Source of the DNA: Macrostomum hystrix
Lineage: Eukaryota > Animalia > Platyhelminthes
Reading direction: 5' to 3'
Length of the DNA stretch: 64,000 nucleotides
NCBI GenBank assembly: GCA_950097015.1
Contig: CATNEN010000004.1
Location: forward strand, 62,001-126,000
Part shown: positions 10,407 to 54,310 of the stretch, piece by piece
Position numbering within the stretch: position 1 is the stretch's first letter
Layout: every line of letters begins with the position of its first letter
The notes under the pieces: generated by a model
Databases searched by the model: none
Told to the model about the DNA's origin: nothing
The model's input: only the letters and a program-made list of their open reading frames with translations
Program-made: the position numbers and the translations under genes

Positions 10407-13134
10407 TCATGAGGGAGCTGGGCTGTGATTGGATGGCGAGGCGCAACCAATAGATGATGCCGGAGTAGACGAGCTTCGACCGTCGCTGGGGTCAGTAGCG
10501 GAGGCAGTAACAGATGACGGGCCGGCGGCAGCGGGGGCAGCCAAGGAGGGCGAAACCGAATCGGATTCCGAGGCCGTCGAGGCAGAGGATGAGGTTGTGA
10601 ACTCAGCGGACGAAGTAACTGAGGCGGTGGTCAAGCTGACGAGCTCGTACCTGAGAGGATCCTTCAGCTGCCGGATCCGAATTAGCAGACGCGGCAACTT
10701 CAAAGGCGGCTGATTAAATCTACTTGTATTTGCTTCTTCATCGCACTCGCCATTTGTTTTTTCTTCTTCGCGATCTCGTTTGGCTGCCGCCGCGGCGGCG
10801 AGCCGGCGCAGCCGCTTATCGGTGTCGCGGAATCTATAGCCTTTGTCCTCGCCGGCAGGCGGCTGCTGCTGGGCGAAGGCGCCGGTGCGGCGACGCTCGC
10901 AGGTTTCGCATTCGCACTCGCAGTTAGACTTGCCGAAGAAGTGGGCCCCATAAAATAGCAGGATCTCGTCGCCTTTGCGAATTGGTCGAATCACCTGCGA
11001 TAAAAATTCGTGATCGAGTGTTTCATCTGCATTGTTGTACTACCTGTGACTGATCAGCAAGCACCGATTCCTCACCTGATAGTGAGCCGAATGGGGTCCA
11101 GTGGGTACAAATCTCACATTGGGCCGGCAGTCGTGATTGATGTAAGCGGCTGGGCCAAGCCACAGCTGTGAGCAGTGCTTGCGAGTTGAGTACATCACTG
11201 AGAAGTCGTTGTGACCAGGCCGCAGGTAGCTGCGCTCTTCGTCCTGCGTCAGTTCAGCGATGCAGCCTGCGAGGACAGGCGGAATTTGGGATCTCTGTAA
11301 CCGATCAACAAATATAGGCAGTCCCTTACGGCCACCAAATCTGCTATCCAGCTATCCAATCAACTATCCAGCTATCCAGCCATCCAATCAGCTATCCAGC
11401 AATCCAGCCATCCAATCAACTATCCAGCAATCCAGCCATCCAATCAACTATCCAGCCATCCAATCAACTATCCAGCTATCCAGCCATCCAATCAGCTATC
11501 CAGCAATCCAGCCATCCAATCAACCAATCAGCTATCCAGCCATCCAATCAACTATCCAGCTATCTAATCAGCTATCCAGCCATCCAATCAGCTATCCAGC
11601 CATCCAATCAACTATCCAGCTATCCAGCTATCTAATCAACTATCCAGCTATCCAGCTATCTAATCAACTATCCAGCTATCTAATCAACTATCCAGCTATC
11701 CAATCAGCTATTCAGCTATCTAATCAGCTATCCAGTTATCTAATCAGCTATCCAGCTATCCAGCCATTAATAAAAAATGAAATTTTAAGAGGCCAATTAT
11801 CAAAAGAAAAAAGTTTGACAATGCACACCAATCAGCATGTCAATCTTCTCATTAGCCTCCCAGTCTCTGGTTGAAACAATTCGAGCCCCGGTGCGATTTT
11901 CATGCGCATAGCGGCGGCACAGTTCAATCCGTACACCGGAGCGCCTGTCGAACAGGTGCAGGTAGCGGTACAGATGCAGGCGAAGGCTGGCGTCCGTGCG
12001 GCGAGCTTCGGTTAGGAACGGCCGGCCGGCCTCAGCTCCGAATTCTGACGGCCGGGCCACGAGGTGAGCATAGGCGGCGGCGTAGTCCTAAGTATAAATT
12101 GGATTTTTAGCTTGTGTTTCTACCGATTGTAGAGTGCTATAGCATCAGTTCTATTAGTTTTTTATCATCTACTGATAGGTGAGATGCAATGATGATGGGA
12201 AACTGATGGGATTAATATGGAAACTGATGGGATTAATATGGAAACTGATGGGATTAATATGGAAACTGATGGGACAAATATGGAAACTGATGGGATTAAT
12301 ATGGAAACTGATGGGACAAATATGGAAACTGATGGGATTAATATGGAAACTGATGGGATTAATATGGAAACTGATGGGATTAATATGGAAACTGATGGGA
12401 CAAATATGGAAACTGATGGGATTAATATGGAAACTGATGGGATTATTATGTAATCTGATGGGATTAATATGGAAACTGATGGGATTAATATGGAATCTGA
12501 TGGGATTAATATGGAAACTGATGGGATTAATATGGAAACTGATGGGATTAATATGGAAACTGATGGGATTAATATGGAAACTGATGGGACAAATATGGAA
12601 ACTCATTGAATCGATATGCAAATTGATAGGATTAATATGGGAAATTATGGGACAAATTTCAAACTGATCGGGATGTGGATAATACTGACAGATAACTGGA
12701 AACTGGGAAATGTTAATTGTGCATTCAAAAGACAGATAAAACAATGTCCAAGCTAGGATTGTTAAAACCCTGATTACCTGATCAATCAGGAAAGCTTCAA
12801 TAGCCGATCTCCAACGCGTAATATGCGACGCAGACGGCTGTCTGAATCGTTCGGCCATTTTGTGACTAACAATGCCCAGCAGCGAGTCCACCACCATGCA
12901 ATTAGCCAGGTCGTCTATGGCACCAAGCTCACGGGCGGACAGGCCACCAGTGTATGGACACGGAGTTGCCACATCTGGTGGACCTAAAGAAGAAGAAGAC
13001 TGCTGCTGCTGCGAGGAAAGCAAAGGCGGCGGCGTGGACACCAGGCGCTGCAGTGAGGCTGGGGAGGAGGGCTGCTGCGATACTGCAGCAGAGGCTGGCT
13101 GGCCAGCTGTGGGGTTGCACTTGGCCTTGCTGGC
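10407..13134 (-). CDS. KMT5B: Histone H4K20 methyltransferase Suv4-20 (KMT5B/C orthologue). Exons 13134-12778, 12087-11829, 11266-11076 and 10994-10407; the first coding exon is unresolved
   Basis: N-terminal [30 protein letters not shown] domain [10 protein letters not shown]...[31 protein letters not shown]...EILLFYG. Post-[14 protein letters not shown]. All junctions are GT-AG and in frame. Confidence 0.93.
11340..11765. repeat. Degenerate ATCCAGCT/ATCCAATCAACT intronic array
   Basis: Directly visible. Confidence 0.9.
12195..12655. repeat. 21-bp intronic minisatellite (GGAAACTGATGGGATTAATAT)
   Basis: Directly visible. Confidence 0.95.
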
Positions 13135-16100
13135 CTGAAAGGTGTACAGATAAAATTGTTTTTTACTGATAATAATAGCTTGTATAGTGGAGCAAAAAAT
13201 GGCATACAAAGTGAGCATCTAATAAATTTCAACTAGCTACACAAAAAACTATAATTTAATTTTAATAACTTTACCCTGGCATACTAGCAAAAATAATACT
13301 GTCATTACTGCCAGTATTTATAATATTTATAATGATATCCATACTTTATAAAAGTTGAACTTGATTATTTGTTTTATATATAAAGCAAGTTTTGGATTTT
13401 GCCATGCAAAGGGGGGTCAATGGCAGGGCAGTTTATACATTTGTCTCTCGTACCAAGGTCCTAAGCTGTATTTTGCAGCAAGGCTACATTCATTTAAGGA
13501 GCAACTGCTGAGAAAAAGCTGAAAAAGGTAGGGGCCTAATTAAGTTGGTCATATTTGGGAACTCTCCTAATATAACTATCACCATTAGGCCAGATATATA
13601 GCTAGCCTAGTCAAAACTAGATATCATTGGCCTTGGCCAACATTTTTTTCTTTGTGAATATGCCTAGCATATATATCTACACAAAACTATATTTTTTTGA
13701 AATATTGCTTATCAACAACAACAAAATACACTAGCAGGATAGAAAAAATGCTGTCATAGGGCACACTTCAGAGCCTGACCACAAACTAAGGCTGCACTGC
13801 TTGCATTAACCAGCAATAGCAGTCAGTTGACAAAATGTGAATTTGCATTTCATTGACTACTAATGCTTAGCAACACTTAGATTATAGCATTATGATATTA
13901 TATTTACATACCCAGCTATAGCCATAGCCACGACAGCTAGGCATGGGTTCTAGTTCTACTGAAGCAAACTAGCAATGCAATGCCAATAGATGCATATTAT
14001 TATTAATATTTGTGACTTGAAGCTGTTTAGTGACAGTCAAATTGGAAAAAGGAACACAGAGAGAACCAATTCTAAGAATTATGTTTTGCAATTAGAATAC
14101 AATCATAAAAAATCAAATGTAATATACATATTTCCAGTGTTAAGAAAAAGCCTAGGCCTAGTAAAATGTATTCAGCAATTTATTAATGCGAAAATAGTTT
14201 AACAAGGAAATATAGCGATATTTCATTAAACACAAGATAAGCCTTACTAATGGCCTTACATATGTTAAGGCTAGGCCTATTTGCTTTAAATTGCTTTAAA
14301 TTTGCTTTAAATTTGCTTTGCTTTAAAGGCTATTGACTAAATTCGTTTTTGGCATAACATAGGACAAAAATTTGTTTGTTTTACCATTTTTGTGTAATTA
14401 AAAGCGAACTGTATAATATATTATTATGGCTATATTGGTTTAACAGATGAATAATTTGCGGTCATAGTGAGATATCACAGGACAGCAGTAATTTACTACT
14501 CTGAGTTAAGCAGCAGCAGCCGGCAGTGAATCTGGTCATGGTCATGGTCAACCACGAAATGAAAGAGAAAATCTAACTCGCGCACGAGTTGAATTCTCGC
14601 TTTAGTTTCTAAGAAACTAGTAAATAAAAACGATTTGCTTTAAGTCCATCGATATGAAAATTTGTTTCGAAAGAAGCAGCTTTGAAAAGGCAAATTCTTA
14701 AAAAATTAACTTTACCTAGGCTCGCAAGTTGAAATGAACATTAAATTCATCAAAACTACCAGAGGCAAAAACGGAAACGCGAATGGTGCATTGAGGAAAA
14801 GTATTGTTGAAAATATAGTTTCTTGACTCTGCTTCTGCGCAAACGGAGTTTCCCGGTTTCGCCTAAATCATCCAAAGTAACTTTTCGGCGCCCTCCATTG
14901 AGCTCCAACAGCCAGATCCAACCCAAGAAGCTCGATGAGTGGCCCCCTCCTGTCAGTTTTTACTCGCGAATGGGCAGAATTTTTCTTCTTTTCTTTTCTT
15001 CAGAATTTTCGCAACCCTGCAACTACTATCTGCAGTCGCCGAGCATGGCATGCGCTGTCAGACAATATTGAGCGTTTCTAAGCTAGGCTGTCGGCACAGC
15101 TTGGCCAGCCAAATTAACCTACGGCGTCCGGAGCTTCTACCAGAGCTTCTACCAAACTCTCGACACCTTGGGGGACCACGATCTCACAGGCATAATACAG
15201 CTATGCCGGAGAGGGGCAGGAATTTTTAAGGGTCAGGAATAGCCCGAACTCGCGCCTTTAGCACTGTATCCAGGGGGGCGAGGCTGTTGTCCGGGTGGCT
15301 TCGGCTTGGCCACACCGGATTTCCGACGCTTGAATCAGAAAGCAGATCGGAAAGGGTCACGGTGAGGGCATTTGAACACGGCCTTCCGTTATGGCTAACT
15401 AATACGCGCGCGCGACTGTCACAGTATATAACCTTTCCTATTTCAATAAAGCATTTGGTGCCTTATGTTTAATTATATTATTCTAATTAATAATTTATTA
15501 GTAAATTGTTCAATTTTAAGTTCACGCGTTAGCGTGTCTATACCCCTGCGCCGCAGGGTATAGATGTACATACTCATCCTACAAAGCATGATTCTTCCGT
15601 TAAATACGAGTAGAAACAATTACTAAAAAGTATTATATGCAAGTTGAATATGTTTAATTCTTTGCTATTCAAATTACAAAGGGCTAATATATACATTTTA
15701 TACAGTTCAGTGTATATACATTATATAGACCTTATTAGCTCGCATTAATAAAATCAACACATGGTTTACACTTGTACGATAGTACACGAACTGTCGAGCG
15801 TACACAGCTGCAATTACATACCAGGATTACCATACCGTACACTTGGCATCACAACACACAAAGCAGGTAAAATATATTTGAGAACAAATAAAATCTAGCA
15901 CCGCAAAAGGGTAGGCGCAATTTCTAATTTAATTTTTTTCCATTTCAGATGTCTGCGAAAAAAATTGCAACACAAGTACGCTTGTATTGTAAACAATTTA
16001 CGAGCAATAGAAACACAAAAAGACAGGTAGTTATTTAAACAAGACACAGTACATGAACAAAACACAGTACATGTAAATATAAGCACTCTGTACGACAGAA

Positions 16101-16308: not shown

Positions 16309-19300
16309 TCACTGAAAGCTGACACTCTTCTTCCTACTGTCGGCCGCCACTCGCTTTCGGTTGCTATCAAAGTTCAGCGTCACCTGCATCTCTCCACCAT
16401 TGGTCACGGCGGTCACTGGCCCTGGCGAGTCTGGCGCCCTCTCAGTCCTCACTGCCGGCTTGGTGCTCCGCTTGCTGACCCTTGGCTGAACCAGCAGGCA
16501 GGACAGAATGTCCGCATGACAGGCGCGGCAGGTCTTGGCCTCCGATTCCTGCGCCTCCTTGGGCGAGAGCCATTCGCCCCAGAAGGTCATCTCGCCGCAC
16601 TCGGGACACTTCACCTCGCGGCGAAACCAGGCAGCTGTGAGAGTAGTTTTTAGGCAAATCTTTAATTGACTTCTTTTGCTGGATTGGAAAAGCTTGCATT
16701 CAATTTGTATATAAACGATATATACTCTTTATGTAAGTGAAGGCATTAGTGTTCTAACAAACTTACCTGGGTATTGTTTCAGCAATTTTTCAGCTTCTAG
16801 TAGTGCCGGGAGAAGACACTTCCACACGCGAGCCAACTGAGTCTTCAACGCGACAACCTCCTCGCTCTCTTCAACTGGCTCCTCCGTCGGGATTCTCTCC
16901 TCGCGCACATAGCTGAACGTCTCTTCCGACACGAGACCACAGGAGAGCATCACAAGGTAGGAGTTGTCTTCGGGGTTCTCTTTAGTCACCCGAAGCCACA
17001 CGCTGCTGTCTTCGGTGTCAAACGCGAGAACCCCGTTACGCCAGTGGTACTGATAGCGCAGCCTCTCCGTGTGCAGACAGACCGTGAGTCGCTCGTGAAA
17101 CATGTGCGGTGTAAAGCGTGTGAATCGAAATCCTGCGCAAACGCGCAGCTCAGCGCGCTGCCAATGATCCAGGGCCACTTTTGGTTCTGGAGACTTGACC
17201 AGGGTGGGCACCAGCAGGCCGATCTTAGACGTGTCCGTGATTAATGCGCCATCTTCGGCTCGTTCAAGATCAAAGTTGAGCTCTCGCTGATGCGGAAGAT
17301 CACTGTCTGTGTGCTCTTTTGGACCACCAATACGATAGCACCACTGCAGGCAGTCGCACAAGTAGTTAATTAAGGTAAACCGCCGCTTTCCAGTACCGAA
17401 GAGCGTTTTAAGAAGGCTGTGCGGCACGATTCCGTGAACCGTGCAGAGTTCCACCGCCTTTGTAAACTCGTCGGCGGAGAAGGCCCTAACAAATCGTTCT
17501 CTGACCTCTTCTTTGTCACTGGGGTCCATTAGAAAGTCATACAGGTTGTGACGGAACACCATGCTGGTGAGCTCAAACAATGCGCTTGGCCGCAGCACCA
17601 CGGTTTCTTTGAACGATGGCTCTCGTTCGTGGTAGATTGCGCGGCCGTTGTCGTGAAGGTACTGGCAAATCTGAGATGTCAGATGCCGTAGACCAAACTG
17701 CTTGTGAACAATGTTCGCCAATTCGTTGAAGCTGATTATGTTTTGATTCTGGCCGAAGTCGTCGAAGTAGTTGTCAGCGTCGCCCCAGAGAGCTGGGATG
17801 ACGCGCATCACTGACGGAAAGGTCTTCGTCTGGGTTGCCAGCTCTACAAGCACTGCTTCAAGGCGTTCAAAACCTAGCATCTGCGCACTGCTCGTGATGA
17901 GTGCCTCCGGGTGGAACAAAGGCTTGAAATTCTTCAGACTTAGATATTGCTTGTACTGCTCATTGAAGGCAGCGGAGATCTGATCAAGGCGCTCAATGCA
18001 GCCAATCTCATGATCGATGCTGGCAAGGTAGTTCTTAATGTACTCCTCGGTGTCATGCTGGGCAAGTTCTAGAACTTTCTCGGGCTTGACCGACTTGTCG
18101 CACAAGTCCGCTTTGGTGCCGATGAGGATAAAGACTGCGCGGTTATTGCGCAGGATTAGCGTGTCAATCCATTGGCCAATCAGCTGCTGAAACTTCTCTG
18201 TGCTGTACTCGGTCAGGTCGAACAAAATCAGAGCCAGCGAGGGAACGTGCAAGAATGGGAAGATGTACGGCATATATTCAAGATTTCCGGAGCAGTCCCA
18301 GATCGACAGGCTCAGAGGCCTTGGATCGGCCAGGTCGTCAGACGTATCGATTTGATAGTCGTAGATGTCTAGGCAGACTGTCTCCTCATCTTCCGTGCAC
18401 AAGCGTGACTGCTGGTCAAGGAAGGTCTGCACAAGACTGGACTTGCCGCAGCCACGTGAGCCCAGCAGAAAAACTTTAATGCCTTGGTAGATCTTGCTGT
18501 CAACCTTAGTCTCGTAGTAGTAATGCAACATGGCCTTCAAGCCACTCTCGCACACATCCCTGGGAGGACTGTTCAGTGGGTTGCCCTGCATGCTGAGCTG
18601 TTTGCTTGTTCTCCAGTCCAGCTTCTTAAATGCGGAGTTGGCAATCACCCTGATGGAGTTCGACGTCAAGTCAAGGTTTTCGGAAATCATAAAGACGTTT
18701 TCGGGGAATCTGGTCAGCTTATTGAAGGATATGTCGACTGACTCAATGAGCCGCTTGTTTTTGGTCTTCAGTGACACAGTTGGAATCTTGGCGACTTCAT
18801 TATTGCTCACTTGAAGACCGTCCAATTTTGGCAGCAGGAAGAGGTCAGGAATTAGGAACGTCAGGCGATTGTGTGACAGGTCGAGCTCCCTGAGGTTAAT
18901 CAGCCTCTTAACATCCACAGTGACGGAAGCGATGTTGTTGTGGCTAAGGTTTAAACACTCGAGCTTCTTCAGCGCATAGAAGTCTCGCGGTATCTCCTCG
19001 ATACAGTTGCCTTGCAGGCTGAGAACCTGCAGTTTGCTCAGCCTTTCCAGATACTTCAGGCTGGCAATCTGATTGTTGTCCGCCAGAAGGGTGTTGAGCT
19101 GGAAGAGATAGGACCAGCTAGATGGGATGGCCGTCAGATGATTGTTGCGCACACTCAAGCTGGCGAGTGACACTAAATCCTTGAAGCAGGTAGGGAAGCC
19201 CTCAGTCGTCAGGCCATTGTCGTCCAAGATTAGCGTCTCAATGTTCAGCAGTCGCTCGGCCAACTCTTGCGGGAAGGCGAATAGTCCTGTGCCGCTCAGT

Positions 19301-19608
19301 TCAAGTGTGCGCAGCGTATCAGCAATGCTGTGCACGTAGTCCAGGTTCTGATAGTACATGCTGTTCAGACGGGCACTCTTCGGTCGCTCCTTGCGTCCGG
19401 ATGGCAGCCGCTCCGGTCGATAATGCCGGTCGCCGCTGACTTGAATCTCGGCCAGGCCGGCCAGGCCCCATGGCGATTCGGCCACCGGCCTGCTGCAGTA
19501 GTTCGCGGCCTCCACTGAGAGCGGCGTCCGGTACAGCCGGCTGGCGTCCTCCTCCTCCTGGATGCGGACCTCCTTCCTAGTCCGGCCTCCGGGCCTTCGC
19601 CTGCTCAT
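16309..19608 (-). CDS. ROCO protein (LRR-ROC-COR), MFHAS1/MASL1-like. Exons 19608-16767 and 16634-16309, ~1055 aa
   Basis: About 10 LRRs (LxxLxLxxNxL). ROC GTPase motifs GSRGCGKS (G1), WDCSG (G3) and TKAD (G4). COR-like region PALW...LHDNG...VVLRP. The intron CAG|GTAAGT...CACAG joins YP|AAWFRREVKCPECG, and the last exon carries two CxxC pairs. Confidence 0.9.
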
Positions 19609-19795
19609 GACCGCCTTGAATTAGCTGAGCTCTCTAGATCCCTGGCGCCACCAACTTGAGTCTACAAATGGCTGAATGCTTTACCAGCAAAAAACTGTCC
19701 TGCGGTAGACACCAAGCTGCACGCCTCTCTCGATTGCTCAGATTTTCAGTCTTATTAAACGCGCCCTAGACCCTCCCCGTCGCCGAAACCCTATA

Positions 19796-19808
19796 GTAGC
19801 CTGGCAAC
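19796..19808. promoter_or_regulatory. Candidate RFX X-box (GTAGCC-T-GGCAAC) 188 bp upstream of the ROCO ATG
   Basis: Exact fit to GTNRCC-N(0-3)-RGYAAC. Confidence 0.4.
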
Positions 19809-20477
19809 ACCAAAAGAAAAAATGCACCGTACACCCTCCGCCCCACCGACCTGCCCGGCCTAAATAGAAAGGCTTCACTCGTCTCTCTCTCTCTCTATCG
19901 CCCGTCTCCAAATCTTTATTTTCTGTTCCAGGCGCGCTCACACTTACAGGCGAGTGCACTAAACCATTGGGCCACAAAAGAATACTTGACCGTCCTCATT
20001 GCGCTTGAGCGACGAAAAAATCTGAGGGACGGAGACACTGGGGGCCGCAGCTAACCCTTCACACAATGCTCTGATTCTGTCCATTTCACAGGCTGTGCGC
20101 GCTTGTGACTTTTCGCTGACCATCTACAGACTGACGGGATAATAAAATGTGCCATGGGCTTTGAAGATGCTTCACCGTAGTTTAGTTACCTCCACAATAA
20201 GTTGCTAGACTGAGTGTAAGAACTCAGTGAGAGCCTGAATGCATTCTACACTCTCATTAGACGTCTTTGAGTTACATTTTCACATTTTCTCGCAGCTCTC
20301 ACTAAATTTTTCTTCTGAAAAAGTGACACTTAACAAACTGCGCCCCGTCTCTCTTACTTTAGAGCGGTACCCGCTTCGAGTCTTTTAGCAACGGTCAGAT
20401 TTTTGTTATAATGATTCAAATAGCTCTTAAAGATTTTAACAGCAGGAGCTACCAAGCCCCTGAAAAACTATTTGACA

Positions 20478-20950
20478 CAGCGTTGGGTGGTTGGTTGATT
20501 GGTTGACAGACTAGGCGATGTTGTTCTGTGATTGAGCTGCGCCTAATATTTAGGCTTTAAAGTGAAAATATCGAAGAAATTCGCGTCAGGGTGTCCATAG
20601 TGGCTTAGTTCCACCTGTTGTAGCCCTTGAAGGTCAAGCAGTCCGTCTAGATAAAGGTAGGGGACCACCGAAGACGGAGATGATGCAGGCACATTCGGGT
20701 GACATGCTGATCAATTTTGAAGGCCTGGCAAGGCCGCACTGAGGCGCAGTGCCAGTTCGTGTATCCGGGTGAATGAAATACACTAGCGCTTATGGGAAAA
20801 ATCCGACCTTCGGCCTGAACCATTGAATATCTTGACGGTCTGAAGAGCTGGCGACTTGATTCTTGTTTCAGAAGATTAGCAACAAAAAGTTGGTCTTGTG
20901 TTCTTGAGTTTCGTGTGCTTGCGTTGCTCCATTCGGGTGCAGCACAAAAA
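20478..20950. mobile_element. ~470-bp dispersed repeat, copy A (MITE-like non-autonomous element)
   Basis: Collinear with and highly similar to 54311-54781. The flanks are imperfectly inverted (CCCCTGA / TCAGGGG). Confidence 0.75.
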
Positions 20951-21024
20951 GTGTCAGGGGACCCCCCTTTGGTAGTTCTAGTGTTAACAACAAATTTCTC
21001 CAACCGTAATTTCTATAGGCAAAG

Positions 21025-21240
21025 CCTGTGTGCAACTACTCAGTCCGTGGACTGGAGAGGCCATCGCAGCCACCCGAATTTCTACTTCAGGTGATTCTGG
21101 TACCCATTTTACAGCTATTGGTGAACAGACGCACTAGGGAATTAAGTGCCTTGCTCAAGGACATAAACTCTTGGGCTGAGATTCGAACTCCAGACCTTTC
21201 AGTCAGAAGTCCGAAGCTCCCAGCTTGAAGCCAGAAGCCA
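21025..21240 (-). mobile_element. tRNA-derived SINE (related subfamily, partial)
   Basis: On the minus strand: B-box GAGTTCGAATC, central ...AAGGCACTTAA...AGCTGTAAATGGGTACC block and a CAGTCCACGGACTG hairpin. Confidence 0.75.
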
Positions 21241-21820
21241 GACCAATCACATAACAGACTAATAACAGTAATGCGTGGTTGATTTCGCAGCCTTGATCTG
21301 GGAGATAATTTTTGGGATTCGCGTTAGCATTAAAAACTATAAGATATAACTTGGGTGTGGCCAATACTGCCCCCTATTGGACTGAATAGTGCATCATGGG
21401 CACACCCTGGCTATATGTTCCGGACCTTCACAACAGCTCAAATTTCATATGAGCTTCTTGCTTACCAACAATTGACTAGCGTACAGTAATTCATTTCTTC
21501 TCATTTTAATACCCACGCATTTTCATGGTTTGGTCATACTGCTTCTATCTCACACCAAATCCTCCTATTAGACTAGCCACAAACATAGTTGCTTTCACTG
21601 TACACAGATGTCTGGCAAAGGAAGGCGCACACTGACTGTGCGTACAAATGTACACTCAAGGACAGAGAGGAAAGACATGCTATTTAGGGGCAGAAGCAGA
21701 AGCGCTGTAAATGCATAGGTTAAGCACAATTGCACATGGGCTTCACTGCGGCGATTGCAGCTAGAAAAACTGCAAACGGTTGGGTCGCTCTTCAGTAAAG
21801 CTTGGAAGGTTCCCTGAGCC

Positions 21821-22645
21821 ATGGAGCCGCATCGGGTGCTGGAGCAACACGCCAGCCTGCCAGTCTGGTGCCTGAGCCGAGCCAATCTCCGCCTGGCTGA
21901 TACGCAGCTGCGCCCGCTGGTCGAGTATGCTGGCACAGTCAGCTGCGACAGCCGGCACTACACCAGCGATCTGCTTGGCCTATTCGAACTGCTCAATGTG
22001 CGCTACATGCGCGAGGAAGCCGAATGCTGCGAGACGATCCGGCTCAGTCTGAGCTGGCTGCTCAGAGCCTGGCTCCGGGCCAGCCCCAAGGAGGCCACCC
22101 TGGGCAACCTGTTCAGCTGTCTGCAACAGCTGGGTCGACCCGACATACTTCAGCGACTGGAAACGCGTATATTTGTCGAGTACTATCACGTGTACATCGG
22201 CTATGACAGGGTCGACGCTGCGAAGGCCAGGAGCCTGATGGACAAGCTGGTTCAGCTGGAGCCCAGCTGGCTTCTGCTGGACTGTCAGCTGGTGTCAGCC
22301 ACGGAATTCCCGCCAACAGCCGTGCTACAGAGATGCTTCAGCAGTATCCTGCTCGTGTCGCAAGCTTACCTGACTGGCAACTCCAGAGCAGCCAATCACG
22401 ATTATATGCGCCTACTGGTCCAGGAGAAGTGCAGAAATTATCCGGCATTCTTCATCACAACGGACTCCACCGCGGCTAGAAATTTGCCAAACGGAATGCG
22501 CCTGTTCCCAATCCTGTCCTGGGGTTTGCTGTCTGTAACCCCAAGGTTCCTAGATCAGGTGCGCCAATGCGTTAAGCATAGAGCCAGGGAGGTTGGTCAG
22601 GGCCATGCGATGCAAGCCGACCCGGTACAGATGGACCAAGATTAA
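21821..22645 (+). CDS. Intronless MyD88-like adaptor: N-terminal Death domain plus C-terminal TIR domain (274 aa)
   Basis: Strong Kozak context GCCATGG. Death-domain signatures SLPVWCLSRANLR and LLRAW...ATLGNLFSCLQQLGRPDILQRL parallel the recalled MyD88 SLPLAALN and LLDAW...ASVGRLLELLTKLGRDDVL. TIR-like YHVYIGY (box 1) and QRCFSSILLVSQAYL (cf. RCRRMVVVVSDDYL). Confidence 0.75.
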   Translation: MEPHRVLEQHASLPVWCLSRANLRLADTQLRPLVEYAGTVSCDSRHYTSDLLGLFELLNVRYMREEAECCETIRLSLSWLLRAWLRASPKEATLGNLFSCLQQLGRPDILQRLETRIFVEYYHVYIGYDRVDAAKARSLMDKLVQLEPSWLLLDCQLVSATEFPPTAVLQRCFSSILLVSQAYLTGNSRAANHDYMRLLVQEKCRNYPAFFITTDSTAARNLPNGMRLFPILSWGLLSVTPRFLDQVRQCVKHRAREVGQGHAMQADPVQMDQD

Positions 22646-22724: not shown

Positions 22725-23320
22725 TTCATTCTCCCAGATCCCCAAAAGGTTCTTCCTCTCAGATTCCCAAAAGGTTCTTCCTCTCAGATTCCCAAAAGGT
22801 TCTTCCTCTCAGATCCCCAAAAGGTTCTTCCTCTCAGATCCCCAAAAGGTTCTTCCTTTCAGATCCCCAAAAGGTTCTTCCTCTCAGGTCCCCAAAAGGT
22901 TCTTCCTCTCAGATCCCCAAAAGGTTCTTCCTCTCAGATCCCCAAAAGGTTCTTCATCTCAAATCCCCAAAAGGTTCTTCATCTCAAATCCCCAAAAGGT
23001 TCTTCCTCTCAGATCCCCAAAAGGTTCTTCCTCTCAGATCCCCAAAAGGTTCTTCCTCTCAGGTCCCCAAAAGGTTCTTCCTCTCAGGTCCCCAAAAGGT
23101 TCTTCCTCTCAGATCCCCAAAAGGTTCTTCCTCTCAGATCCCCAAAAGGTTCTTCCTCTCAGGTCCCCAAAAGGTTCTTCCTCTCAGATCCCCAAAAGGT
23201 TCTTCCTCTCAGATCCCCAAAAGGTTCTTCCTCTCAGATCCCCAAAAGGTTCTTCCTCTCAGATCCCCAAAAGGTTCTTCCTCTCAGATCCTCCAAAAGG
23301 TTCTTCCTCTCAGATCTTCT
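22725..23320. repeat. 25-bp minisatellite (CCCCAAAAGGTTCTTCCTCTCAGAT) just 3' of the MyD88-like gene
   Basis: Directly visible. Confidence 0.97.
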
Positions 23321-23859: not shown

Positions 23860-24475
23860 CCAACACTAGTTTTTGGGGTGGTGGGTCGCCACGACTGGTT
23901 TGTGTGGTGGTGGGTCGCCACGACTGGTTTGTAGGGTGGTGGGTCGCCAAGACTGGTTTGTGGGGTGGTGGGTCGCCAAGAATGGTTTGTGGGGTGGTGG
24001 GTCGCCAAGACTGGTTTGTGGGGTGGTGGGTCGCCAAGACTAGTTTGTGGGGTGGTGGGTCGCCAAGACTAGTTTGTGGGGTGGTGGGTCGCGACGACTG
24101 GTTTGTGGGGTGGTGGGTCGCCAAGACTAGTTTGTGGGGTGGAGGGTCGCGACGACTGGTTTGTGGGATGGTGGGTCGCGACGACTGGTTTGTGGGGTGG
24201 TGGGCTGCCAAGACTGGTTTGTGGGGTGGTGGGTCGCCAAGACTAGTTTGTGGGGTGGTGGGTCGCTACGACTGGTTTGTGGGGTGGTCGGTCGCCAAGA
24301 CTGGTTTGTGGGGTGGTGGGTCGCCAAGACTGGTTTGTGGGGTGGTGGGTCGCTACGACTGGTTTGTGGGGTGGTCGGTCGCCAAGACTGGTTTGTGGGG
24401 TGGTGGGTCGCCAAGACTGGTTTGTGGGGTGGTGGGTCGCTATGGCTGCTTTGTGGGGTGGTGGGTCGCCACCAC
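23860..24475. repeat. ~29-bp G-rich minisatellite (GGTTTGTGGGGTGGTGGGTCGCCAAGACT)
   Basis: Directly visible. The multiple G-tracts are G4-prone. Confidence 0.95.
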
Positions 24476-25927
24476 TATTTTATGAGGCCTCCATTTGTTT
24501 GGGAGTGCGCCGCCACGTAGAATTTTTATGAGAATTTTAATGCTTCACTCGTATTTTGATTTGCTGGTAAGCATAGCTCTTGCAAAAGGACACCTTAAAA
24601 CAAGCCACACCCAACACACTATGCCGGTAAAGTGCACAATTTGTCTTTTGTCAGTTTATTAATTTGTTTTTCCAAATTGGGCTGGGTGAGATCGGCTCAT
24701 ATACAGTTTTTTGCTGACTATTATTCTGTCAATGTAATAATGTTTCCAATAGAAAAATAACTGTACGAATGCGTGTCTAATACGATCTGAATTATTTGTG
24801 CTACACTGTCCCACTCATAATTCTCACTCATCCTCAACACTCGCGGAAAGCAAGATTATCATGTAAGAACATATCTAAAAATTCCAATGAAATGCAGCCG
24901 AACTCAGCAGAAAATCTATGCTCATCTATGCTCATGACTTCATTAGCTTTGTTTCCCAGTGCGTGCTGAGGACTGTCTGAAGAAGTGGCGAACCCATAAC
25001 CCCCTCTGCACCCATGGAATCGCCTTATAGAGAGGGACTCCGAAGGGTGGATCGGAGGAAGGTGTGGTCCGCTGTGCTCAGCTGTGCTCAGCCAAACGGC
25101 TGATTCGACATCTGCCTTCGTGCACCTCTAGCCGTCCCTCCCTAACCTTCGTCGCCCCAACCCGACCTACCCGTGGCTCTCGGCGAGATTAGCCGTTAAG
25201 GGGGGCCTTGCCCACCTCCTCATACCTTTATTTCATATTTCCTCATCTGTTTTCGTCGTTCCATATCTTTTTGCTCGCGGTCCCAAATCAACTGGCTATA
25301 GGACACTGCAAAGGACTCTCAGGTGCTGCTCACTATATTAGCCACTCTGTCTCACCCCCTTCTGTGACCAGCATAGCGTGCCAGTGCCTCTTCCTCTAGA
25401 AGAAGCAGCTACTCTTATCTTTTGTGAGGCTCGGGGTGAAAATCTTCAAGCCTGCTCATTAACTTCTCTGCCCCCCTCAGACAGGCGGTCGGAGGTTCTT
25501 ATTCCCCGTTCCTCTTTCGAATCGGCTGCTTTCTGTCTCCGACTGTTTCTTGGGCTGCTGTGAGCAACTCCGGCTCAGCTAATCACAGCTAATCACTGCC
25601 ATCGACTGCCGTCTAGAACAGGTGGAACTTTGCTCCACCTCCCGCCTCACTGTACTCTTCATCCTTAAATCTGCTTGACAAGCAAACTTTTCTTTTCTTG
25701 CTTTTTTCGTTGTCCAATTTCTGAAAAGCTTTGTTTTACCTTAGATCTTATTTTAGCTCAAGCAGAAATCGGTATCTGATAACTTCTTCTGTCGATAATA
25801 AACTCTTGGCACTTGAAAATTTCAATATTCTAGATACAGGTAAGAATAACCTTTGCGCTTTTGTACCTGTTTTGTAATCGCAATGTCAAAGCAGTCACGA
25901 CTCACGACTCACATTGCATAACGACTT

Positions 25928-26408
25928 TAGATAGTGGGATAGTGGGATAGTGGGGATAGTGGGATAGTGGGATAGTGTGACAGTGAGATAGTGGGATAGT
26001 GGGATAGTGGGATAGTGGGATAGTGGGATACTGGGATACTGGGATAGTGGGATAGTGGGATAGTGGGATAGTAGGATAGTGGGATAGTGGGACAGTGGGA
26101 TAGTGGGACAGTGGGATAGTGTGACAGTGAGATAGTGGGATAGTGGGATAGTGGGATAGTGGGATAGTGGGATACTGGGATACTGGGATAGTGGGATAGT
26201 GGGATAGTGGGATAGTAGGATAGTGGGATAGTGGGACAGTGGGATAGTGGGACAGTGGGATAGTGTGACAGTGAGATAGTGGGATAGTGGGATAGTGGGA
26301 TAGTGGGATACTGGGATACTGGGATAGTGGGATAGTGGGATAGTGGGATAATGGGAGACTGTGATAGTGGGATAGTGGGATAGTGGGATAGTGGGATAGT
26401 GGGATAGT
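25928..26408. repeat. 8-bp (GATAGTGG)n array with ~150-bp higher-order repetition
   Basis: Directly visible. The variant block GTGTGACAGTGAG recurs. Confidence 0.95.
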
Positions 26409-26485
26409 TGGACAGTGGGGCAGGGTGTCTTAGCACGGCATTTCAGACTGTCTGTGATCACATTAAAATTTTTCAGAAAACTCGC

Positions 26486-28581
26486 ATGGAGGCAGCAGGT
26501 TCGAGTCCTGAAAATGCCGAAGGACCCTCCGCCGCCGCTTCTGGCAGAGGTCGTCAGGCGGAGGTCAGCACCAGGATGAAGGGGGTGCATCGGCAGCTGG
26601 AGGAGCTGGACCGCTTCCGCGAGGAGCGTCGCCGAGCCGAAGAGATCGACGACGACAATGAGAAGTCGCTGACTAACAAGGACGCCCTGCTGATTGAGAC
26701 CAACCCGTTGGAGCGGGCGGAGGTGCTTGCCAACGAGGAAGCTGGGCGACGGGACCGGATGAGGCGAGAGGACAGCAAAAAGGTGCTGCAGCAGTACATC
26801 GGCATGCAGGTAGGATAAATTTAACACCCTTGTGCCACCTGGGAAACTGGAATGGGAATGAGAAACGAAGGGGTTGACGAAACTCCAAATGCAACAAAAT
26901 TATTTCGACATGATGAAATATGGTCTGTCTCGCGCAAAATCCCTCGAGGCCAAAGACTGCATCGCAAATCTGCTTGATTGTGATTTCGAAACGTTAGCCT
27001 TGCTGTGTACAGGTGTTCTCAAATTCTGAAAGGTCCTCCCTGTAATGATTTTTGCTTGATAAAATGCATTCGGATGCATTAAACATTTTGATCGGGATTA
27101 ATTCTCTTTAAAGTTAATTCTACAGCTTGATGTCTCTTTTTTCTGTACAGATAACAAATCAAATGATAATTACGTGTATAACAAACGACAATAGAAAGAC
27201 AGTCAAATGCAGCACAAACAAACAATTATTAAATCTTTAGTACAGCGAGCAAAGCTCCTTATTCACCCCACCAGCTCCTGTGTCTCATCTCTTCCGTGTC
27301 TCATCTCTCCAATGTTGTCTCATCTCTCCAGTGTTGTCTCATCTCTCCGGTGTTGTCTCATCTCTCCAGTGTTGTCTCATCTCTTCAGTGTTGTCTCATC
27401 TCTCCGGTGTTGTCTTATCTCTCCGGTGTTGTCTCATCTCTCCGGTGTTGTCTCATCTCTCCGGTGTTGTCTCATCTCTCCGGTGTTGTCTCATCTCTTC
27501 AGTGTTGTCTCATCTCTCCGGTGTTGTCTCATATCTCCGGTGTTGTCTCATCTCTCCGGTGTTGTCTCATCTCTCCAGTGTTGTCTCATCTCTTCAGTGT
27601 TGTCTCATCTCTCCAGTGTTGTCTCATCTCTTCAGTGTTGTCTCATCTCTCCAGTGTTGTCTCATCACTCCAGTGTTGTCTCGTCTATCCCGCGTCGTCT
27701 CGTTTCTCCCAATCTCTAATCTCTCCTATTTTCCAGTTTTATTCTGCATTCACACCTTCGAGTTCAATGAAAACTGAAAGGTTATGGCGGAAATCAAGCG
27801 GCGAAAGCGGCTGAGCGCAGCGGGCCGGACCAGCAGCCAAATGGACAGCTCCAGCGACGATGAGCACAATGACGACGAGAAAGCTTGCGAGGCGGAGGAC
27901 ACGGATGCTCAGGATGCGTCCCCAGGAACCAAGGAGGAAGCTGCTACGGAGGCTGGCACCGCGACGCCAGTTGATGAGGCTGATACGGAGGCTGGCACTG
28001 CCGCGCCAGTTGATGAGGCTTCTACGGAGGCTGGCACTGCCGCGCCAGTTGATGAGGCTGCTACGGAGGCTGGCACCACCGCGCCAGTTGATGAAGCCGC
28101 TACGGAGGCTGGCACTGCCGCGCCAGTTGATGAAGCCGCTACGGAGGCTGGCACTGCCGCGCCAGTTGATGAAGCCGCTACGGAGGCTGGCACTGCCGCG
28201 CCAGTTGATGAAGCCGCTACGGAGGCTGGCACTGCCGCGCCAGTTGATGAAGCCGCTACGGAGGCTGGCACTGCCGCGCCAGTTGATGAAGCCGCTACGG
28301 AGGCTGGCACTGCCGCGCCAGTTGATGAAGCCGCTATGGAGGCTGGCACTGCCGCGCCAGTTGATGAAGCCGCTACGGAGGCTGGCACTGCCGCGCCAGT
28401 TGATGAGGCTGATACGGAGGCTGGCACTGCCGCGCCAGTTGATGAAGCCGCTACGGAGGCTGGCACTGCCGCGCCAGTTGATGAAGCTGCTACGGAGGCT
28501 GGCACTGCTGCCATTGCAACTAACGCAGATGTGAAGTCAACTTCGATGAATTCCGAAACTAAACTAGCCTCCGCAACGTAA
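26486..28581 (+). CDS. Uncharacterised protein with a charged helical N-terminus and ~15 copies of a 13-aa acidic repeat (TEAGTAAPVDEAA). Exons ~26486-26809 and 27781-28581 (or to a donor at ~28577)
   Basis: Two GC-rich ORFs join in frame via CAG|GTAGG...GAAAG|GTT (YIGMQ|VMAEIKRRK). No family recognised. Confidence 0.6.
27268..27680. repeat. 19-bp intronic minisatellite (TGTTGTCTCATCTCTCCAG)
   Basis: Directly visible. Confidence 0.95.
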
Positions 28582-49860: not shown

Positions 49861-51870
49861 TCAGCTGTCAGTGGCGGTCTGCAGCTTCAGATGGTGCTGC
49901 TCGGAAGCTGGCCCCACAGCCACCAGGAGTCCCTCGGCCTCCGACCTGTTGGCAGCACCGTCTAACCGTCTGATGCCGCCGCTGCTGGAGCCGCCACCGC
50001 CGCCGCCGCGACTGTGCCTGGTGCAAATGTCGTAGCAGTGGATGCAGAAGTCGATCAGTTCTACAACTGAGATCATTGTGAGGCCAACGAAGATGGAGAA
50101 AAGTCCACCAATCTGACTCAGGAAGGAAGTCAGAGACAGGACCTCCTTCTCCTCGACCTTGTGCAGATCAAAGTTGGGCCGGATAAGCTGAATGGACAGC
50201 AGATTGCGCTCCAGCAGGCTCTCGTGCTTCAGCGTGGTGTAGGCCTCCTTAAAGCTACCGTTTTCGCTGTTCATGATGTCTATGGCCTGTTTGTACGATT
50301 TCATCTCCGGTCGGTTCAGCAGACGCCGATAGACCCGGCTGCCAAGAAGGCGTAGCTGGAAGGACCTGGTGGGCCAGTCAGAGGTCGAGCGCTCAGTCTG
50401 GTAGCTGTAGAACGAGCACGGCAGGGTGCAGCTGGCCACCACATCTTTGGAATACTTGGAGATGACGTCGTTCTTGCAGCGGATGTAGCCATAGACCTTC
50501 AGCAGAGTGGCCCGGCAGCTGGCCAGCTTGTCCGGCTGCAAATTCGCAGTGCGCCAGTCGCAGCCGTCGCTGCGCAGGAACTCAACCAGGCCAGTACAGT
50601 AGGTGAAGTTGGCCTCCCTAACTAGCGGATACTCGATGGCCTGGCAGCCGCAGGTGCTGAGAATGTCTCGCTGGATGGTGGCCTGACGGCAGGCGTCCTC
50701 GCTATACCTGTACTCCCTGCCGAACAGGTTGAGGTTTCTTTGCGTGTCCTGCGAGCACCGACCGTAGGGCGCCTGCTTCTGAACGTTTAGCACGTGCTTT
50801 AGTTTGACCTCGGTCAGTGAGCCCGACTTCAGATGAATGGCCTCGTGGTTCACGTCCGGATAAGTGTCGCCAGCGTGTATGGTAAGAACCGCACCCGACA
50901 GCTGCGTGCTGATGTCCATTGTGTAGCAGTCAACGCAGTGGAAGTTCTCCAGGTTCCACTCATTGTCCAGGTACACTGCCATCTCAACCATGGTGGTATT
51001 GTCTCGCAGCTCCTCGTGCAGGTCAAGCGTGTAGCAGTTCATGTAGTTGCCATGCAGGAAGGCGTGAAAATTGCCGGCGTGCATGTCGGCACCGGAACCG
51101 TTCCAGGCGTATTCGGGACTGCAGAACTTCTGGTTGCGAGCGCTGCCGTTCCGGATGACGGCTCGACAGTCAAGGATAAAGTCCTGCAGCGAGTGGCCGA
51201 TGTCCCGACTGGCGGCGCTGGGCAAGCTCTCCAGGTAAGCTGGGAAACCCAGCGAGCCAGAGAAGTTGTAGTAGATAAACTGCGTGGACTCATTGTAGAA
51301 AAACAGGTTGCGGATGAATAGCTCCAGCGACTCGGAGAAGTCGCGCGGATATTTCCAGCCCTGCTCCTTCAGCCGGCGCCGGCCCTCTGAGGACAGTGGA
51401 CGCATGTTGCAGAGAGTGACTGATGGGAAGGGCGAGTTGTAGTCTTTCAGCACGCGCGGCGGATGCATGACATCGTATTCGATAAACTGCAGCGTCAGGA
51501 ACGACAAGCAAAGGATGCAGGCAACAAAAAGGGCGACAACAAAGAAGATCCACAGAAGGCGGATGCGACGGCTCTCCGACTTGACGATGCGTGGAATGCC
51601 GCGAATGGTGGTGTTCTCGCAGAAGCAGATGAACTGGCGGTGCAGGGCGCTGCGGACCGGGACAAGGTTGGCTGGCCCGGTCGCTTCCACAACTGCCAAT
51701 GAGGCCACAGCCGACGCCTGCACGTTGGCGTCAGCGTCAGCGCCATCGTCACTCCGAGCCCGACTGTTGGCCTGGACAGCGTACCGGTGCAGCGGGAGCG
51801 TCACGGAGTCATTCGTGTTAGCACCACCGTCGTCAGTTAGGTGAAGGCGCTTCGGCTGCTGTCTCGACAC
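49861..51870 (-). CDS. DEG/ENaC (amiloride-sensitive) channel subunit, intronless body; true start unresolved
   Basis: FCENTTIRGIPRI, TM1, FPSVTLCN, GNYMNCYT, cysteine-rich thumb, and TM2 FLSQIGGLFSIFVGLTMISVVELIDF. Confidence 0.93.
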   Translation of the reverse strand: MSRQQPKRLHLTDDGGANTNDSVTLPLHRYAVQANSRARSDDGADADANVQASAVASLAVVEATGPANLVPVRSALHRQFICFCENTTIRGIPRIVKSESRRIRLLWIFFVVALFVACILCLSFLTLQFIEYDVMHPPRVLKDYNSPFPSVTLCNMRPLSSEGRRRLKEQGWKYPRDFSESLELFIRNLFFYNESTQFIYYNFSGSLGFPAYLESLPSAASRDIGHSLQDFILDCRAVIRNGSARNQKFCSPEYAWNGSGADMHAGNFHAFLHGNYMNCYTLDLHEELRDNTTMVEMAVYLDNEWNLENFHCVDCYTMDISTQLSGAVLTIHAGDTYPDVNHEAIHLKSGSLTEVKLKHVLNVQKQAPYGRCSQDTQRNLNLFGREYRYSEDACRQATIQRDILSTCGCQAIEYPLVREANFTYCTGLVEFLRSDGCDWRTANLQPDKLASCRATLLKVYGYIRCKNDVISKYSKDVVASCTLPCSFYSYQTERSTSDWPTRSFQLRLLGSRVYRRLLNRPEMKSYKQAIDIMNSENGSFKEAYTTLKHESLLERNLLSIQLIRPNFDLHKVEEKEVLSLTSFLSQIGGLFSIFVGLTMISVVELIDFCIHCYDICTRHSRGGGGGGSSSGGIRRLDGAANRSEAEGLLVAVGPASEQHHLKLQTATDS

Positions 51871-54092: not shown

Positions 54093-54310
54093 AATTATTT
54101 CATTGAGTGAACTGTTGACGTTTAAAGGATGCATAAATATTAAATTAAAGTACTTTTACACAGTTAGGGAATCGGAAAAAGTGGCATTAAATCTTTGATT
54201 TTCGGATTATTGAATTTAGGGTTACGGTTTTTTTACAGTAAGACTACGAAGCCATTTTGCCACCCAGGGAAAGTTCCCCCTGACATTTTTTGGCAGCGCC
54301 TGAATGCTAA

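What the first reader, a model, noticed from the sequence alone, without database searches (positions are those of the whole stretch)
16309..22645. Head-to-head LRR-ROC-COR gene and MyD88-like Death-TIR gene: candidate TLR-independent innate-immune module
Seen: a ROCO gene (ATG 19608, -) and a Death+TIR gene (ATG 21821, +) diverge from a shared 2.2-kb region, and both are nearly or wholly intronless. Known: MyD88 is the DD-TIR adaptor of TLR/IL-1R, vertebrate MFHAS1 is reported to modulate TLR signalling, and canonical TLRs are generally reported as missing from surveyed platyhelminths. Inference: if this is a flatworm, a retained MyD88-like adaptor paired with a cytosolic LRR-GTPase could be a co-regulated sensor-adaptor pair, analogous to head-to-head NLR pairs in plants.
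Basis: partly seen in the sequence, partly recalled or inferred. Interest (0 to 1): 0.8.

Follow-up and report, generated by a model that had tools for sequence, protein, structure and literature searches.

The report
Flatworm ROCO GTPase beside MyD88-like adaptor
In a Macrostomum flatworm, a real and expressed LRR-Roc-COR GTPase gene sits back-to-back with a fast-evolving MyD88-like (Death plus TIR) adaptor gene, but nothing found here shows the two work together rather than simply being neighbours.

Summary
A two-exon LRR-Roc-COR gene (ATG 19608, minus strand, 1055 aa) and an intronless 274-aa gene (ATG 21821, plus strand) diverge across 2,212 bp. Both are covered by spliced, zero-mismatch transcript contigs.

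The host is a Macrostomum species, a congener of M. lignano (dS about 1.5). TLRs are reported absent from that lineage.

The small protein has a Death domain just above Pfam's cutoff and a very divergent C-terminal TIR. Pfam misses the TIR, and an exhaustive search finds no relative outside the genus. The TIR call rests on an in-register profile-profile match (0 of 300 shuffles reach it), on language-model features of both orthologues, and on the ESM Atlas's own model of the M. lignano orthologue.

The functional-pair idea is not supported:
- The adjacency is conserved in M. lignano, but so is a third colinear block.
- Transcript ends lie about 2 kb apart, with a species-specific transposon copy between them.
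- The only conserved non-coding element lies beside ROCO.
- No Death or TIR domain was detected in the ROCO protein.

A planarian MyD88 is already published. The scan noted Roco-TIR fusion genes and a divergent TIR adaptor (not this pair) on other pieces of this genome. Verdict: new, divergent members of known families.

The parts
16309..16634 (-). ROCO exon 2: the C-terminal tail with a CxxC...CxxC zinc-ribbon-like motif, plus the stop codon
   Evidence: It aligns to the C-terminus of M. lignano P0002. The spliced contigs join 16634 to 16767. The CDS is in frame.
16635..16766 (-). The single ROCO intron (132 nt, GTAAGT...CAG)
   Evidence: A joint is seen in X3 and X4 contigs with 0 mismatches. 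Splice sites were read.
16767..19608 (-). ROCO exon 1 coding region. LRRs span about residues 95-345 (18574-19326), Roc 378-524 (18037-18477) and COR about 605-904 (16897-17796).
   Evidence: Pfam gives LRR_8 5e-22, Roc 5.5e-13, Ras 1.2e-13, COR-A 2e-5 and COR-B 0.04. hhalign against COR profiles gives P 0.007 and is colinear. Residues 98-507 match LRRK2 1084-1461. The motifs GSRGCGKS, DCSG and TKAD are present. The protein is 87% identical to M. lignano P0002.
19609..19741 (-). Minimum ROCO 5' UTR (the contig end is not a mapped transcription start)
   Evidence: The X3 contig reaches 19741 and the X4 contig reaches 19709.
19795..19812 (.). The only conserved non-coding block: an exact 18-mer shared with M. 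lignano, containing an RFX X-box-like site (GTAGCCTGGCAAC)
   Evidence: It scores 36.2 bits against a shuffle maximum of 30.2, with 0 of 100 shuffles reaching it. It lies 187 and 182 nt upstream of the ROCO ATG in the two species. It holds the sole match to the pattern in 64 kb, where 0.11 are expected.
20477..21214 (.). Dispersed high-copy repeat (transposable-element copy) inside the intergenic region
   Evidence: It is 89% identical to window 54310-54784, with a second piece matching 53803-54003 inverted, and it is absent from L001 and L002. It shows very high depth and many diverged contigs in the transcriptome runs. No Rfam or tRNA match was found.
21737..21820 (+). Minimum 5' UTR of the DD-TIR gene
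   Evidence: The X4 contig starts at 21737 and the X3 contig at 21773, both colinear with the genome.
21821..22168 (+). Death-domain half of the adaptor (residues 1-116)
   Evidence: Pfam Death scores 24.7 bits (cutoff 22.6) here and 27.5 bits in the orthologue. The best PDB profile hits are all death domains: ankyrin, NRADD and p75NTR.
22175..22615 (+). Divergent TIR domain (residues about 119-265). Boxes 1 and 3 are recognisable and box 2 (the BB loop) is degenerate.
   Evidence: hhalign against TIR profiles gives P 4e-4, in register, with 0 of 300 shuffles reaching the score. Pfam TIR_2 gives E 0.056 for the orthologue's C-terminal part. Alignment A5 lines up the landmarks. The ESM Atlas's own model of P0001 best matches the MyD88 cluster, and TIR clusters align to its residues 113-263. 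A TIR-seeded AF2 model reaches pLDDT 81, and Foldseek's top hits are SIGIRR and MyD88 TIR.
22731..23316 (.). Tandem repeat of 25 nt x 23 copies, starting 86 nt after the DD-TIR stop, at or in the 3' UTR
   Evidence: TRF. The DD-TIR contigs run about 271 nt past 22499.

Best explanation
These are two genuine, expressed, separately transcribed neighbouring genes of a Macrostomum flatworm.

Gene 1 encodes a 1055-aa kinase-less LRR-Roc-COR GTPase of the MFHAS1 type. Its G1, G3 and G4 motifs are intact and it carries a short zinc-ribbon-like tail. By inference it is a GTP-controlled switch whose LRRs bind partners. It is under very strong purifying selection (dN/dS 0.04).

Gene 2 encodes a 274-aa MyD88-like adaptor: an N-terminal Death domain joined almost directly to a highly divergent TIR domain. 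It is under weaker purifying selection (dN/dS 0.24) and is undetectable by sequence outside the genus. By inference from the MyD88 paradigm, its TIR is recruited by TIR-bearing upstream proteins other than TLRs, and its Death domain nucleates a death-fold oligomer with downstream death-domain proteins.

Shown: gene models, expression, domain content, orthology and synteny with M. lignano. Inferred: the biochemical roles.

The head-to-head arrangement is most likely ordinary conserved microsynteny with two independent promoters, not a functional module.
For: Gene models and expression. ROCO domains and motifs.

Flatworm origin and orthology: ROCO is 87% and DD-TIR 56% identical to M. lignano proteins, and dS is similar for both genes at 1.65 and 1.46.

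Death domain.

TIR: an in-register hhalign match, P 4e-4, score 27.7-29.1 against shuffles of 12.2 +/- 2.3, with 0 of 300 reaching it. Box 1 and box 3 line up in A5. Feature similarity to MyD88 clusters is 0.92 with 172-178 shared features for both orthologues. The ESM Atlas's own single-sequence model of P0001 (pTM 0.65) best matches the MyD88 cluster (TM 0.51, residues 46-263), and 8 of 10 rows are TIR clusters.

Independent promoters and plain microsynteny: transcript ends are about 2 kb apart with a transposon copy between them. The only conserved non-coding block is next to ROCO. A third colinear conserved block lies at 26534-26811.
Against: The TIR call never reaches a curated threshold. 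Pfam TIR_2 gives E 0.056-0.13, and only in the orthologue. hhalign's own probability is 26-35%. The exhaustive search of 1.84 billion representatives found no relative besides M. lignano. The AF2 model without TIR sequences failed at pLDDT 35, and the good model is circular.

Contig ends are not transcription starts, so the true promoter spacing is unknown. Co-regulation was not tested at all. ROCO-TIR domain fusions exist in prokaryotic or metagenomic proteins and, according to unchecked scan notes, in this genome, so a ROCO-TIR functional link is not absurd.
Confidence: 0.72

Rival explanations
1. The ROCO protein is a cytosolic LRR sensor and the DD-TIR protein is its dedicated adaptor. They are co-regulated from the shared intergenic region and stand in for TLR-MyD88 in a TLR-less animal, by analogy with plant head-to-head NLR pairs.
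For: The divergent adjacency is conserved across dS of about 1.5 in both M. lignano copies. Both genes are expressed in the same whole-animal transcriptomes. TLRs are absent from M. lignano. MFHAS1 modulates TLR2 signalling in mammals. LRR-Roc-COR-TIR fusions exist in metagenomic proteins P0013, P0024 and P0027.
Against: No Death or TIR domain was detected in the ROCO protein for homotypic contact. Microsynteny extends to a third block, so the linkage is not specific to the pair. Transcript ends are about 2 kb apart with a lineage-specific transposon copy in between. The only conserved non-coding element is next to ROCO. The two genes evolve at rates five to six times apart, which does not suggest a tightly co-evolving pair.
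Confidence: 0.1
2. The DD-TIR protein is not a signal-competent MyD88 orthologue. It is a degenerate or regulatory derivative, such as a decoy or brake like the mammalian MyD88s splice form, or an adaptor rewired to other partners.
For: There is almost no linker between the Death domain (Pfam match to residue 115) and TIR box 1 (residue about 122), whereas human MyD88 has an intermediate domain of about 45 aa (my own knowledge). The BB-loop Pro-Gly columns of the TLR TIRs align with Ser-Ala here. The box 1 Asp is replaced by His. dN/dS of 0.24 is high compared with the neighbouring gene. No sequence relative is detectable outside the genus.
Against: The protein is still under purifying selection in both halves, with dN 0.34 and 0.32 against dS 1.15 and 1.64, and it is expressed. 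Loop alignments at 12-24% identity are unreliable. Invertebrate MyD88s vary in their linkers.
Confidence: 0.25
3. The ROCO gene belongs to a ciliary (RFX-controlled) programme and has nothing to do with immunity. Its neighbour is incidental.
For: The only conserved non-coding block, about 55 nt beyond the end of the ROCO transcript contig, contains the window's sole match to an X-box-type pattern. The best solved-structure matches of its LRRs are LRRD1, a sperm axoneme component (PMC12297659).
Against: The X-box consensus is recalled from memory, and 11 of 100 shuffles give at least one match in the window. The site has a 1-nt spacer rather than the common 2-nt spacer. The LRRD1 similarity is confined to generic LRRs. 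No expression pattern is known.
Confidence: 0.15

Closest known systems
MyD88 (Death-TIR adaptor of TLR/IL-1R signalling), including the in-silico Smed-MyD88 of the planarian Schmidtea mediterranea (Tsoumtsa 2018, as cited in PMC7958881)
   Same: The domain order is the same (N-terminal Death, C-terminal TIR) and the size is similar (274 aa). The nearest language-model and structure clusters are MyD88. It occurs in a phylum without canonical TLRs.
   Different: It has no significant sequence match to any MyD88. It has almost no intermediate domain. Box 2 (the BB loop) is degenerate and box 1 has His in place of Asp. Orthology is unproven.
MFHAS1/MASL1 and related kinase-less metazoan ROCO proteins
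   Same: It has the LRR-Roc-COR architecture without a kinase, and intact GTP-binding motifs. The best named full-length relatives are amphioxus 'MFHAS1-like' proteins.
   Different: It is only 23-26% identical to them. COR is weakly recognisable. It has an extra C-terminal CxxC...CxxC tail encoded by a separate exon. Orthology to vertebrate MFHAS1 was not established.
Plant head-to-head NLR pairs (e.g. RRS1/RPS4, RGA4/RGA5)
   Same: Both are divergently oriented neighbouring genes with immune-type domains.
   Different: Here the partners belong to different families. The intergenic distance is about 2 kb and holds a transposon copy. There is no integrated decoy and no genetic evidence of co-requirement. 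The resemblance is only positional.
Prokaryotic/metagenomic LRR-Roc-COR-TIR fusion proteins (P0013, P0024, P0027)
   Same: They combine a ROCO core with a TIR domain.
   Different: In those proteins both parts sit in one polypeptide, and the TIR is of the TIR_2 type. Here the two are separate genes, and the TIR protein also has a Death domain.

Membership tests
MyD88 | N-terminal Death domain | tested here: met
   Pfam Death scores 24.7 bits (cutoff 22.6) in the window protein and 27.5 bits in the orthologue. The PDB profile hits are all death domains.
MyD88 | C-terminal TIR domain | tested here: met
   It is below Pfam's cutoff. It is supported by an in-register hhalign match at P 4e-4 that 0 of 300 shuffles reach, by the ESM Atlas's own model of P0001 matching MyD88 and TIR clusters, and by feature scores of 0.92 in both orthologues. 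SEFIR ranks lower throughout.
MyD88 | Intermediate domain between Death and TIR (needed for IRAK4 recruitment in mammals; my own knowledge) | tested here: not met
   The Death match ends at residue 115 and TIR box 1 starts at about residue 122, leaving a linker of roughly 5 residues.
MyD88 | Conserved TIR box 2 / BB-loop (RDxxPG) proline | tested here: inconclusive
   In A5 the Pro-Gly columns of the TLR TIRs align with Ser-Ala, although a conserved FP follows a few residues later. Loop alignment at 12-24% identity is unreliable.
MyD88 | Orthology by reciprocal best hit or phylogeny | tested here: inconclusive
   No significant hit was found outside Macrostomum among 1.84 billion representatives or in the PDB, so no tree is possible.
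MyD88 | Signals to IRAK/Pelle-type kinases and NF-kB | not testable with these tools
   This needs biochemistry or RNAi.
ROCO (MFHAS1 type) | Roc GTPase domain with G1, G3 and G4 motifs | tested here: met
   Pfam Roc scores 49.6 bits (cutoff 27). The motifs GSRGCGKS, DCSG and TKAD are present. It aligns with LRRK2 Roc.
ROCO (MFHAS1 type) | COR domain immediately after Roc | tested here: met
   The support is weak. COR-A gives E 2e-5 but 25 bits against a cutoff of 35.3, and COR-B gives E 0.04. hhalign gives a colinear match from COR-A to COR-B, P 0.007 over 167 columns, with signature motifs aligned.
ROCO (MFHAS1 type) | N-terminal LRRs and no kinase domain | tested here: met
   LRR_8 gives 5e-22, and no kinase family appears among the Pfam hits across the whole protein.
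ROCO (MFHAS1 type) | Orthology to vertebrate MFHAS1 | tested here: inconclusive
   The best named relatives are amphioxus 'MFHAS1-like' proteins at 23-26% identity. No reciprocal search or tree was done.
Bidirectional-promoter gene pair | Divergent transcription starts within about 1 kb, sharing regulatory DNA | tested here: not met
   Transcript contig ends lie at 19741 and 21737. No assembled transcript covers 19900-20299 or 21300-21699, and a transposon copy lies between. Caveat: contigs do not map true starts.
Functionally coupled head-to-head immune gene pair (plant NLR-pair analogy) | Linkage conserved beyond background synteny, and co-requirement | tested here: not met
   Linkage is conserved only within the genus, alongside a third colinear block. 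Co-requirement is not testable here.

The most novel reading that the evidence does not exclude
In TLR-less macrostomid flatworms, a genus-restricted, linker-less MyD88-like adaptor is the hub through which cytosolic ROCO GTPases signal. These could be the adjacent LRR-Roc-COR protein or, more plausibly on mechanistic grounds, the Roco proteins with fused TIR domains that the scan noted elsewhere in this genome. That would be a GTPase-gated, receptor-independent replacement for the TLR-MyD88 axis.
Probability: 0.08. Interest if true: 0.75.

Novelty: new member of a known kind. Interest (0 to 1): 0.3.

Why it matters
Flatworms lack canonical Toll-like receptors, so how their remaining TIR and Death-domain proteins are activated is an open question in comparative immunology. 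This locus supplies a clean, expressed, intronless MyD88-like gene in Macrostomum. Public databases label its M. lignano orthologue only as a 'Death domain-containing' or hypothetical protein, and standard domain scans miss its TIR half. That makes it a concrete RNAi and biochemistry target in a tractable model genus. The proposed ROCO partnership would be interesting if true, but the present evidence points to ordinary neighbours. The main value of this report is a corrected annotation and a set of specific tests.

Tried and rejected
- AlphaFold2 on the full protein with the two-sequence alignment gave pLDDT 35 and was unusable.
- phmmer and profile searches of the PDB found death domains only, and no TIR.
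- Pfam found no TIR in the window protein even at E 10.
- The word-based search and the exhaustive protein search found only the M. lignano orthologue, so no phylogeny or reciprocal-best-hit test of MyD88 orthology was possible.
- The Atlas feature search on the C-terminal half alone gave TIR adaptors at only 0.86-0.87, below the 0.9 lead level.
- The TIR-seeded AF2 model and its Foldseek search were kept only as a compatibility check, because the alignment presupposes TIR.
- SEFIR (an Act1-like Death-SEFIR adaptor) was considered and ranked below TIR by every method.
- Rfam and tRNA scans of the intergenic region and of the whole window found nothing.
- L003, the next-closest ROCO (32% identity, a 4.3-kb Logan contig), has no DD-TIR match and too little flank to test adjacency.
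- Depth in Logan contigs cannot rank expression, so no co-expression inference was drawn.
- A 25-letter non-matching 5' end on one ROCO contig might be a trans-spliced leader, but this could not be resolved.

Full report
**Observation**

The six-frame ORF list shows a 959-aa ORF at 16729-19608 (-), a 101-aa ORF at 16309-16614 (-), and a 274-aa ORF at 21821-22645 (+).

The M. lignano protein P0002 (1058 aa, 87% identical) aligns with the long ORF and then continues into the short one. Transcriptome contigs from runs X3 and X4 lie on the window with zero mismatches and join 16634 to 16767. The ROCO gene therefore has one 132-nt intron (GTAAGT..CAG). Its 3168-nt CDS encodes 1055 aa, and the junction peptide is identical to the M. 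lignano protein.

The small gene is colinear with an intronless 263-aa M. lignano gene. Contigs cover it from 21737 to about 22770. Both genes are therefore real and expressed.

**Organism and context**

The nearest proteins are from Macrostomum lignano. Only coding DNA aligns between the two genomes: 80% nt identity for ROCO and 66% for the small gene. Synonymous divergence is near saturation and similar for the two genes, at dS 1.65 and 1.46. The window therefore comes from a congener, and the M. lignano genes are true orthologues.

A survey reports no TLR in the M. lignano genome or in other flatworms (PMC8609888). MFHAS1 is reported to modulate TLR2/NF-kB signalling (PMC4658032). A MyD88 has already been described in silico in the planarian S. 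mediterranea (PMC7958881 citing Tsoumtsa 2018, and PMC6043800).

**The ROCO protein**

- **Pfam:** LRR_8 5e-22, Roc 5.5e-13 and Ras 1.2e-13. COR-A scores 2e-5 but falls below its cutoff, COR-B scores 0.04, and there is no kinase.
- **COR:** a profile of the post-Roc region aligns colinearly with strong COR-A and COR-B profiles from other ROCO proteins (P 0.007, 167 columns). The FLHDLG, IPxLLPxxEP and WRxGV signature stretches are in register.
- **Roc:** residues 98-507 align with LRRK2 1084-1461. The motifs GSRGCGKS, DCSG and TKAD are intact.
- **Relatives:** the best named full-length relatives are amphioxus 'MFHAS1-like' proteins at 23-26% identity.
- **Selection:** dN/dS is 0.04.

This is a kinase-less MFHAS1-type ROCO GTPase. 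It also has an extra CxxC...CxxC tail encoded by exon 2.

**The small protein**

The Death domain passes Pfam's cutoff narrowly, at 24.7 bits here and 27.5 bits in the orthologue. A two-sequence profile finds only death domains in the PDB.

The C-terminal half is the hard part. Pfam sees nothing in the window protein, and only a sub-threshold TIR_2 match in the orthologue (E 0.056-0.13) starting at profile position 1. An exhaustive HMM search of 1.84 billion representatives finds only the M. lignano orthologue.

Four further lines of evidence converge on TIR:

1. **Profile-profile match.** hhalign against seven TIR domains taken from tool-returned TLRs and ROCO-TIR proteins aligns box 1 through strand C in register. 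P is 4e-4 to 7e-4 and the score 27.7-29.1. Column shuffles give 12.2 +/- 2.3 (maximum 25.5, 0 of 300 reaching the real score), and the reversed control gives 11.7.
2. **Full-domain alignment.** MAFFT lines up YHVYIGY..D with YDAFISY..D, ILLVSQAYL with ICVISRRYL, and ILSW..TPRFLDQVRQCV with YLSWP..TELFWEKLRQAL.
3. **Language-model features.** The features place both orthologues nearest to MyD88 and Death+TIR clusters, at 0.92 with 172-178 shared features. Death-SEFIR clusters score lower.
4. **ESM Atlas model.** The Atlas's own single-sequence model of P0001 (pTM 0.65) has the MyD88 cluster as its best structural neighbour (TM 0.51 over residues 46-263), and 8 of its 10 rows are TIR clusters. 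TIR clusters align to residues 113-263. This evidence is independent of any TIR-seeded alignment.

An AF2 model built with TIR sequences in the alignment reaches pLDDT 81. It hits SIGIRR, MyD88, TIRAP and TLR2 TIR domains first. I count that only as compatibility, because the alignment presupposes TIR.

The protein departs from canonical MyD88 in three ways. It has almost no linker between Death and TIR. Its box 2 is degenerate. Box 1 has His in place of Asp.

Both halves are under purifying selection (overall dN/dS 0.24), but the protein changes about five times faster than ROCO.

**Is the pair a module?**

The same divergent arrangement occurs in both M. lignano copies, L001 and L002, which are 98% identical to each other. 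However:

- A third block, window 26534-26811, is colinear with L001 14523-14800 at 87% nt identity. The linkage therefore reflects general microsynteny within one genus.
- The intergenic DNA cannot be aligned, apart from one exact 18-mer at 19795-19812. It scores 36.2 bits against a shuffle maximum of 30.2.
- That 18-mer lies 187 and 182 nt upstream of the ROCO ATG in the two species, just beyond the end of the ROCO contig.
- The 18-mer contains the window's only match to an X-box-type pattern, with 0.11 expected. Nothing is conserved near the DD-TIR start.
- The contig ends are 1,995 bp apart. No assembled transcript covers 19900-20299 or 21300-21699.
- A dispersed repeat lies at 20477-21214. 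A second copy sits at 53803-54784, and the repeat is absent from the M. lignano loci.
- No Death or TIR domain was detected in the ROCO protein, so no homotypic docking surface for the adaptor is apparent.

On the other side, ROCO-TIR fusions do exist in metagenomic proteins. Unchecked scan notes also report them in this genome, so a ROCO-TIR connection in general is not far-fetched. If anything, those fused proteins are better candidates for upstream partners of the adaptor than the adjacent ROCO.

**Verdict**

The sensor-adaptor module is an untested hypothesis, and the regulatory and synteny evidence leans against it.

The genes are divergent new members of known families. The MyD88-like gene is under-annotated in public databases and would be a useful experimental handle.

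All read laying input stayed within 6,000 letters.

Noticed in passing
window 19795-19812 (= L001 8401-8418): An exact 18-mer is conserved in otherwise unalignable intergenic DNA, at the same offset (about 185 nt) upstream of the ROCO ATG in both species. It contains GTAGCCTGGCAAC, an RFX X-box-like palindrome and the only such match in the 64-kb window.
   Followed up: partly
window 20477-21214 and 53803-54784: A dispersed repeat has two copies in the window (89% identical) and very high, polymorphic coverage in the transcriptome assemblies. It has no Rfam or tRNA match and is absent from the M. lignano orthologous loci. It is probably an active or recently active transposable element.
   Followed up: partly
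window 26534-26811 (= L001 14523-14800): A 278-nt block is 87% identical to M. lignano, which is more conserved than the ROCO coding sequence. It lies inside a 310-aa ORF (25895-26827, -) that has no Pfam match. It may be a conserved exon or a non-coding element of unknown nature.
   Followed up: no
window 22731-23316 and 23860-24471: Two long tandem arrays (25 nt x 23 copies and 29 nt x 21 copies) lie directly downstream of the DD-TIR gene and create spurious 214-216-aa repeat ORFs. M. lignano also has tandem arrays downstream of its orthologue (L001 about 11630-14325).
   Followed up: no
proteins P0013, P0024, P0027 (metagenomic ROCO hits): These are LRR-Roc-COR proteins with a C-terminal TIR_2 domain (E 7.6e-13 to 2.6e-29). 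They represent a ROCO-TIR domain fusion outside animals.
   Followed up: partly
window 49861-51870 (-): A 669-aa intronless ORF has a full-length amiloride-sensitive sodium channel (ASC/DEG-ENaC) match at 4e-58.
   Followed up: no
window 16309-16634 (-), ROCO exon 2: The C-terminal CPECG...CRAC zinc-ribbon-like tail is conserved with M. lignano. I am not aware of such a tail being described for MFHAS1-type ROCO proteins.
   Followed up: no
L001 vs L002 (M. lignano NIVC01000524.1 and NIVC01001392.1): The whole ROCO and DD-TIR locus is present twice in the M. lignano assembly at 98% identity. This is consistent with the recent genome duplication, or with uncollapsed haplotypes, of that species.
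   Followed up: no
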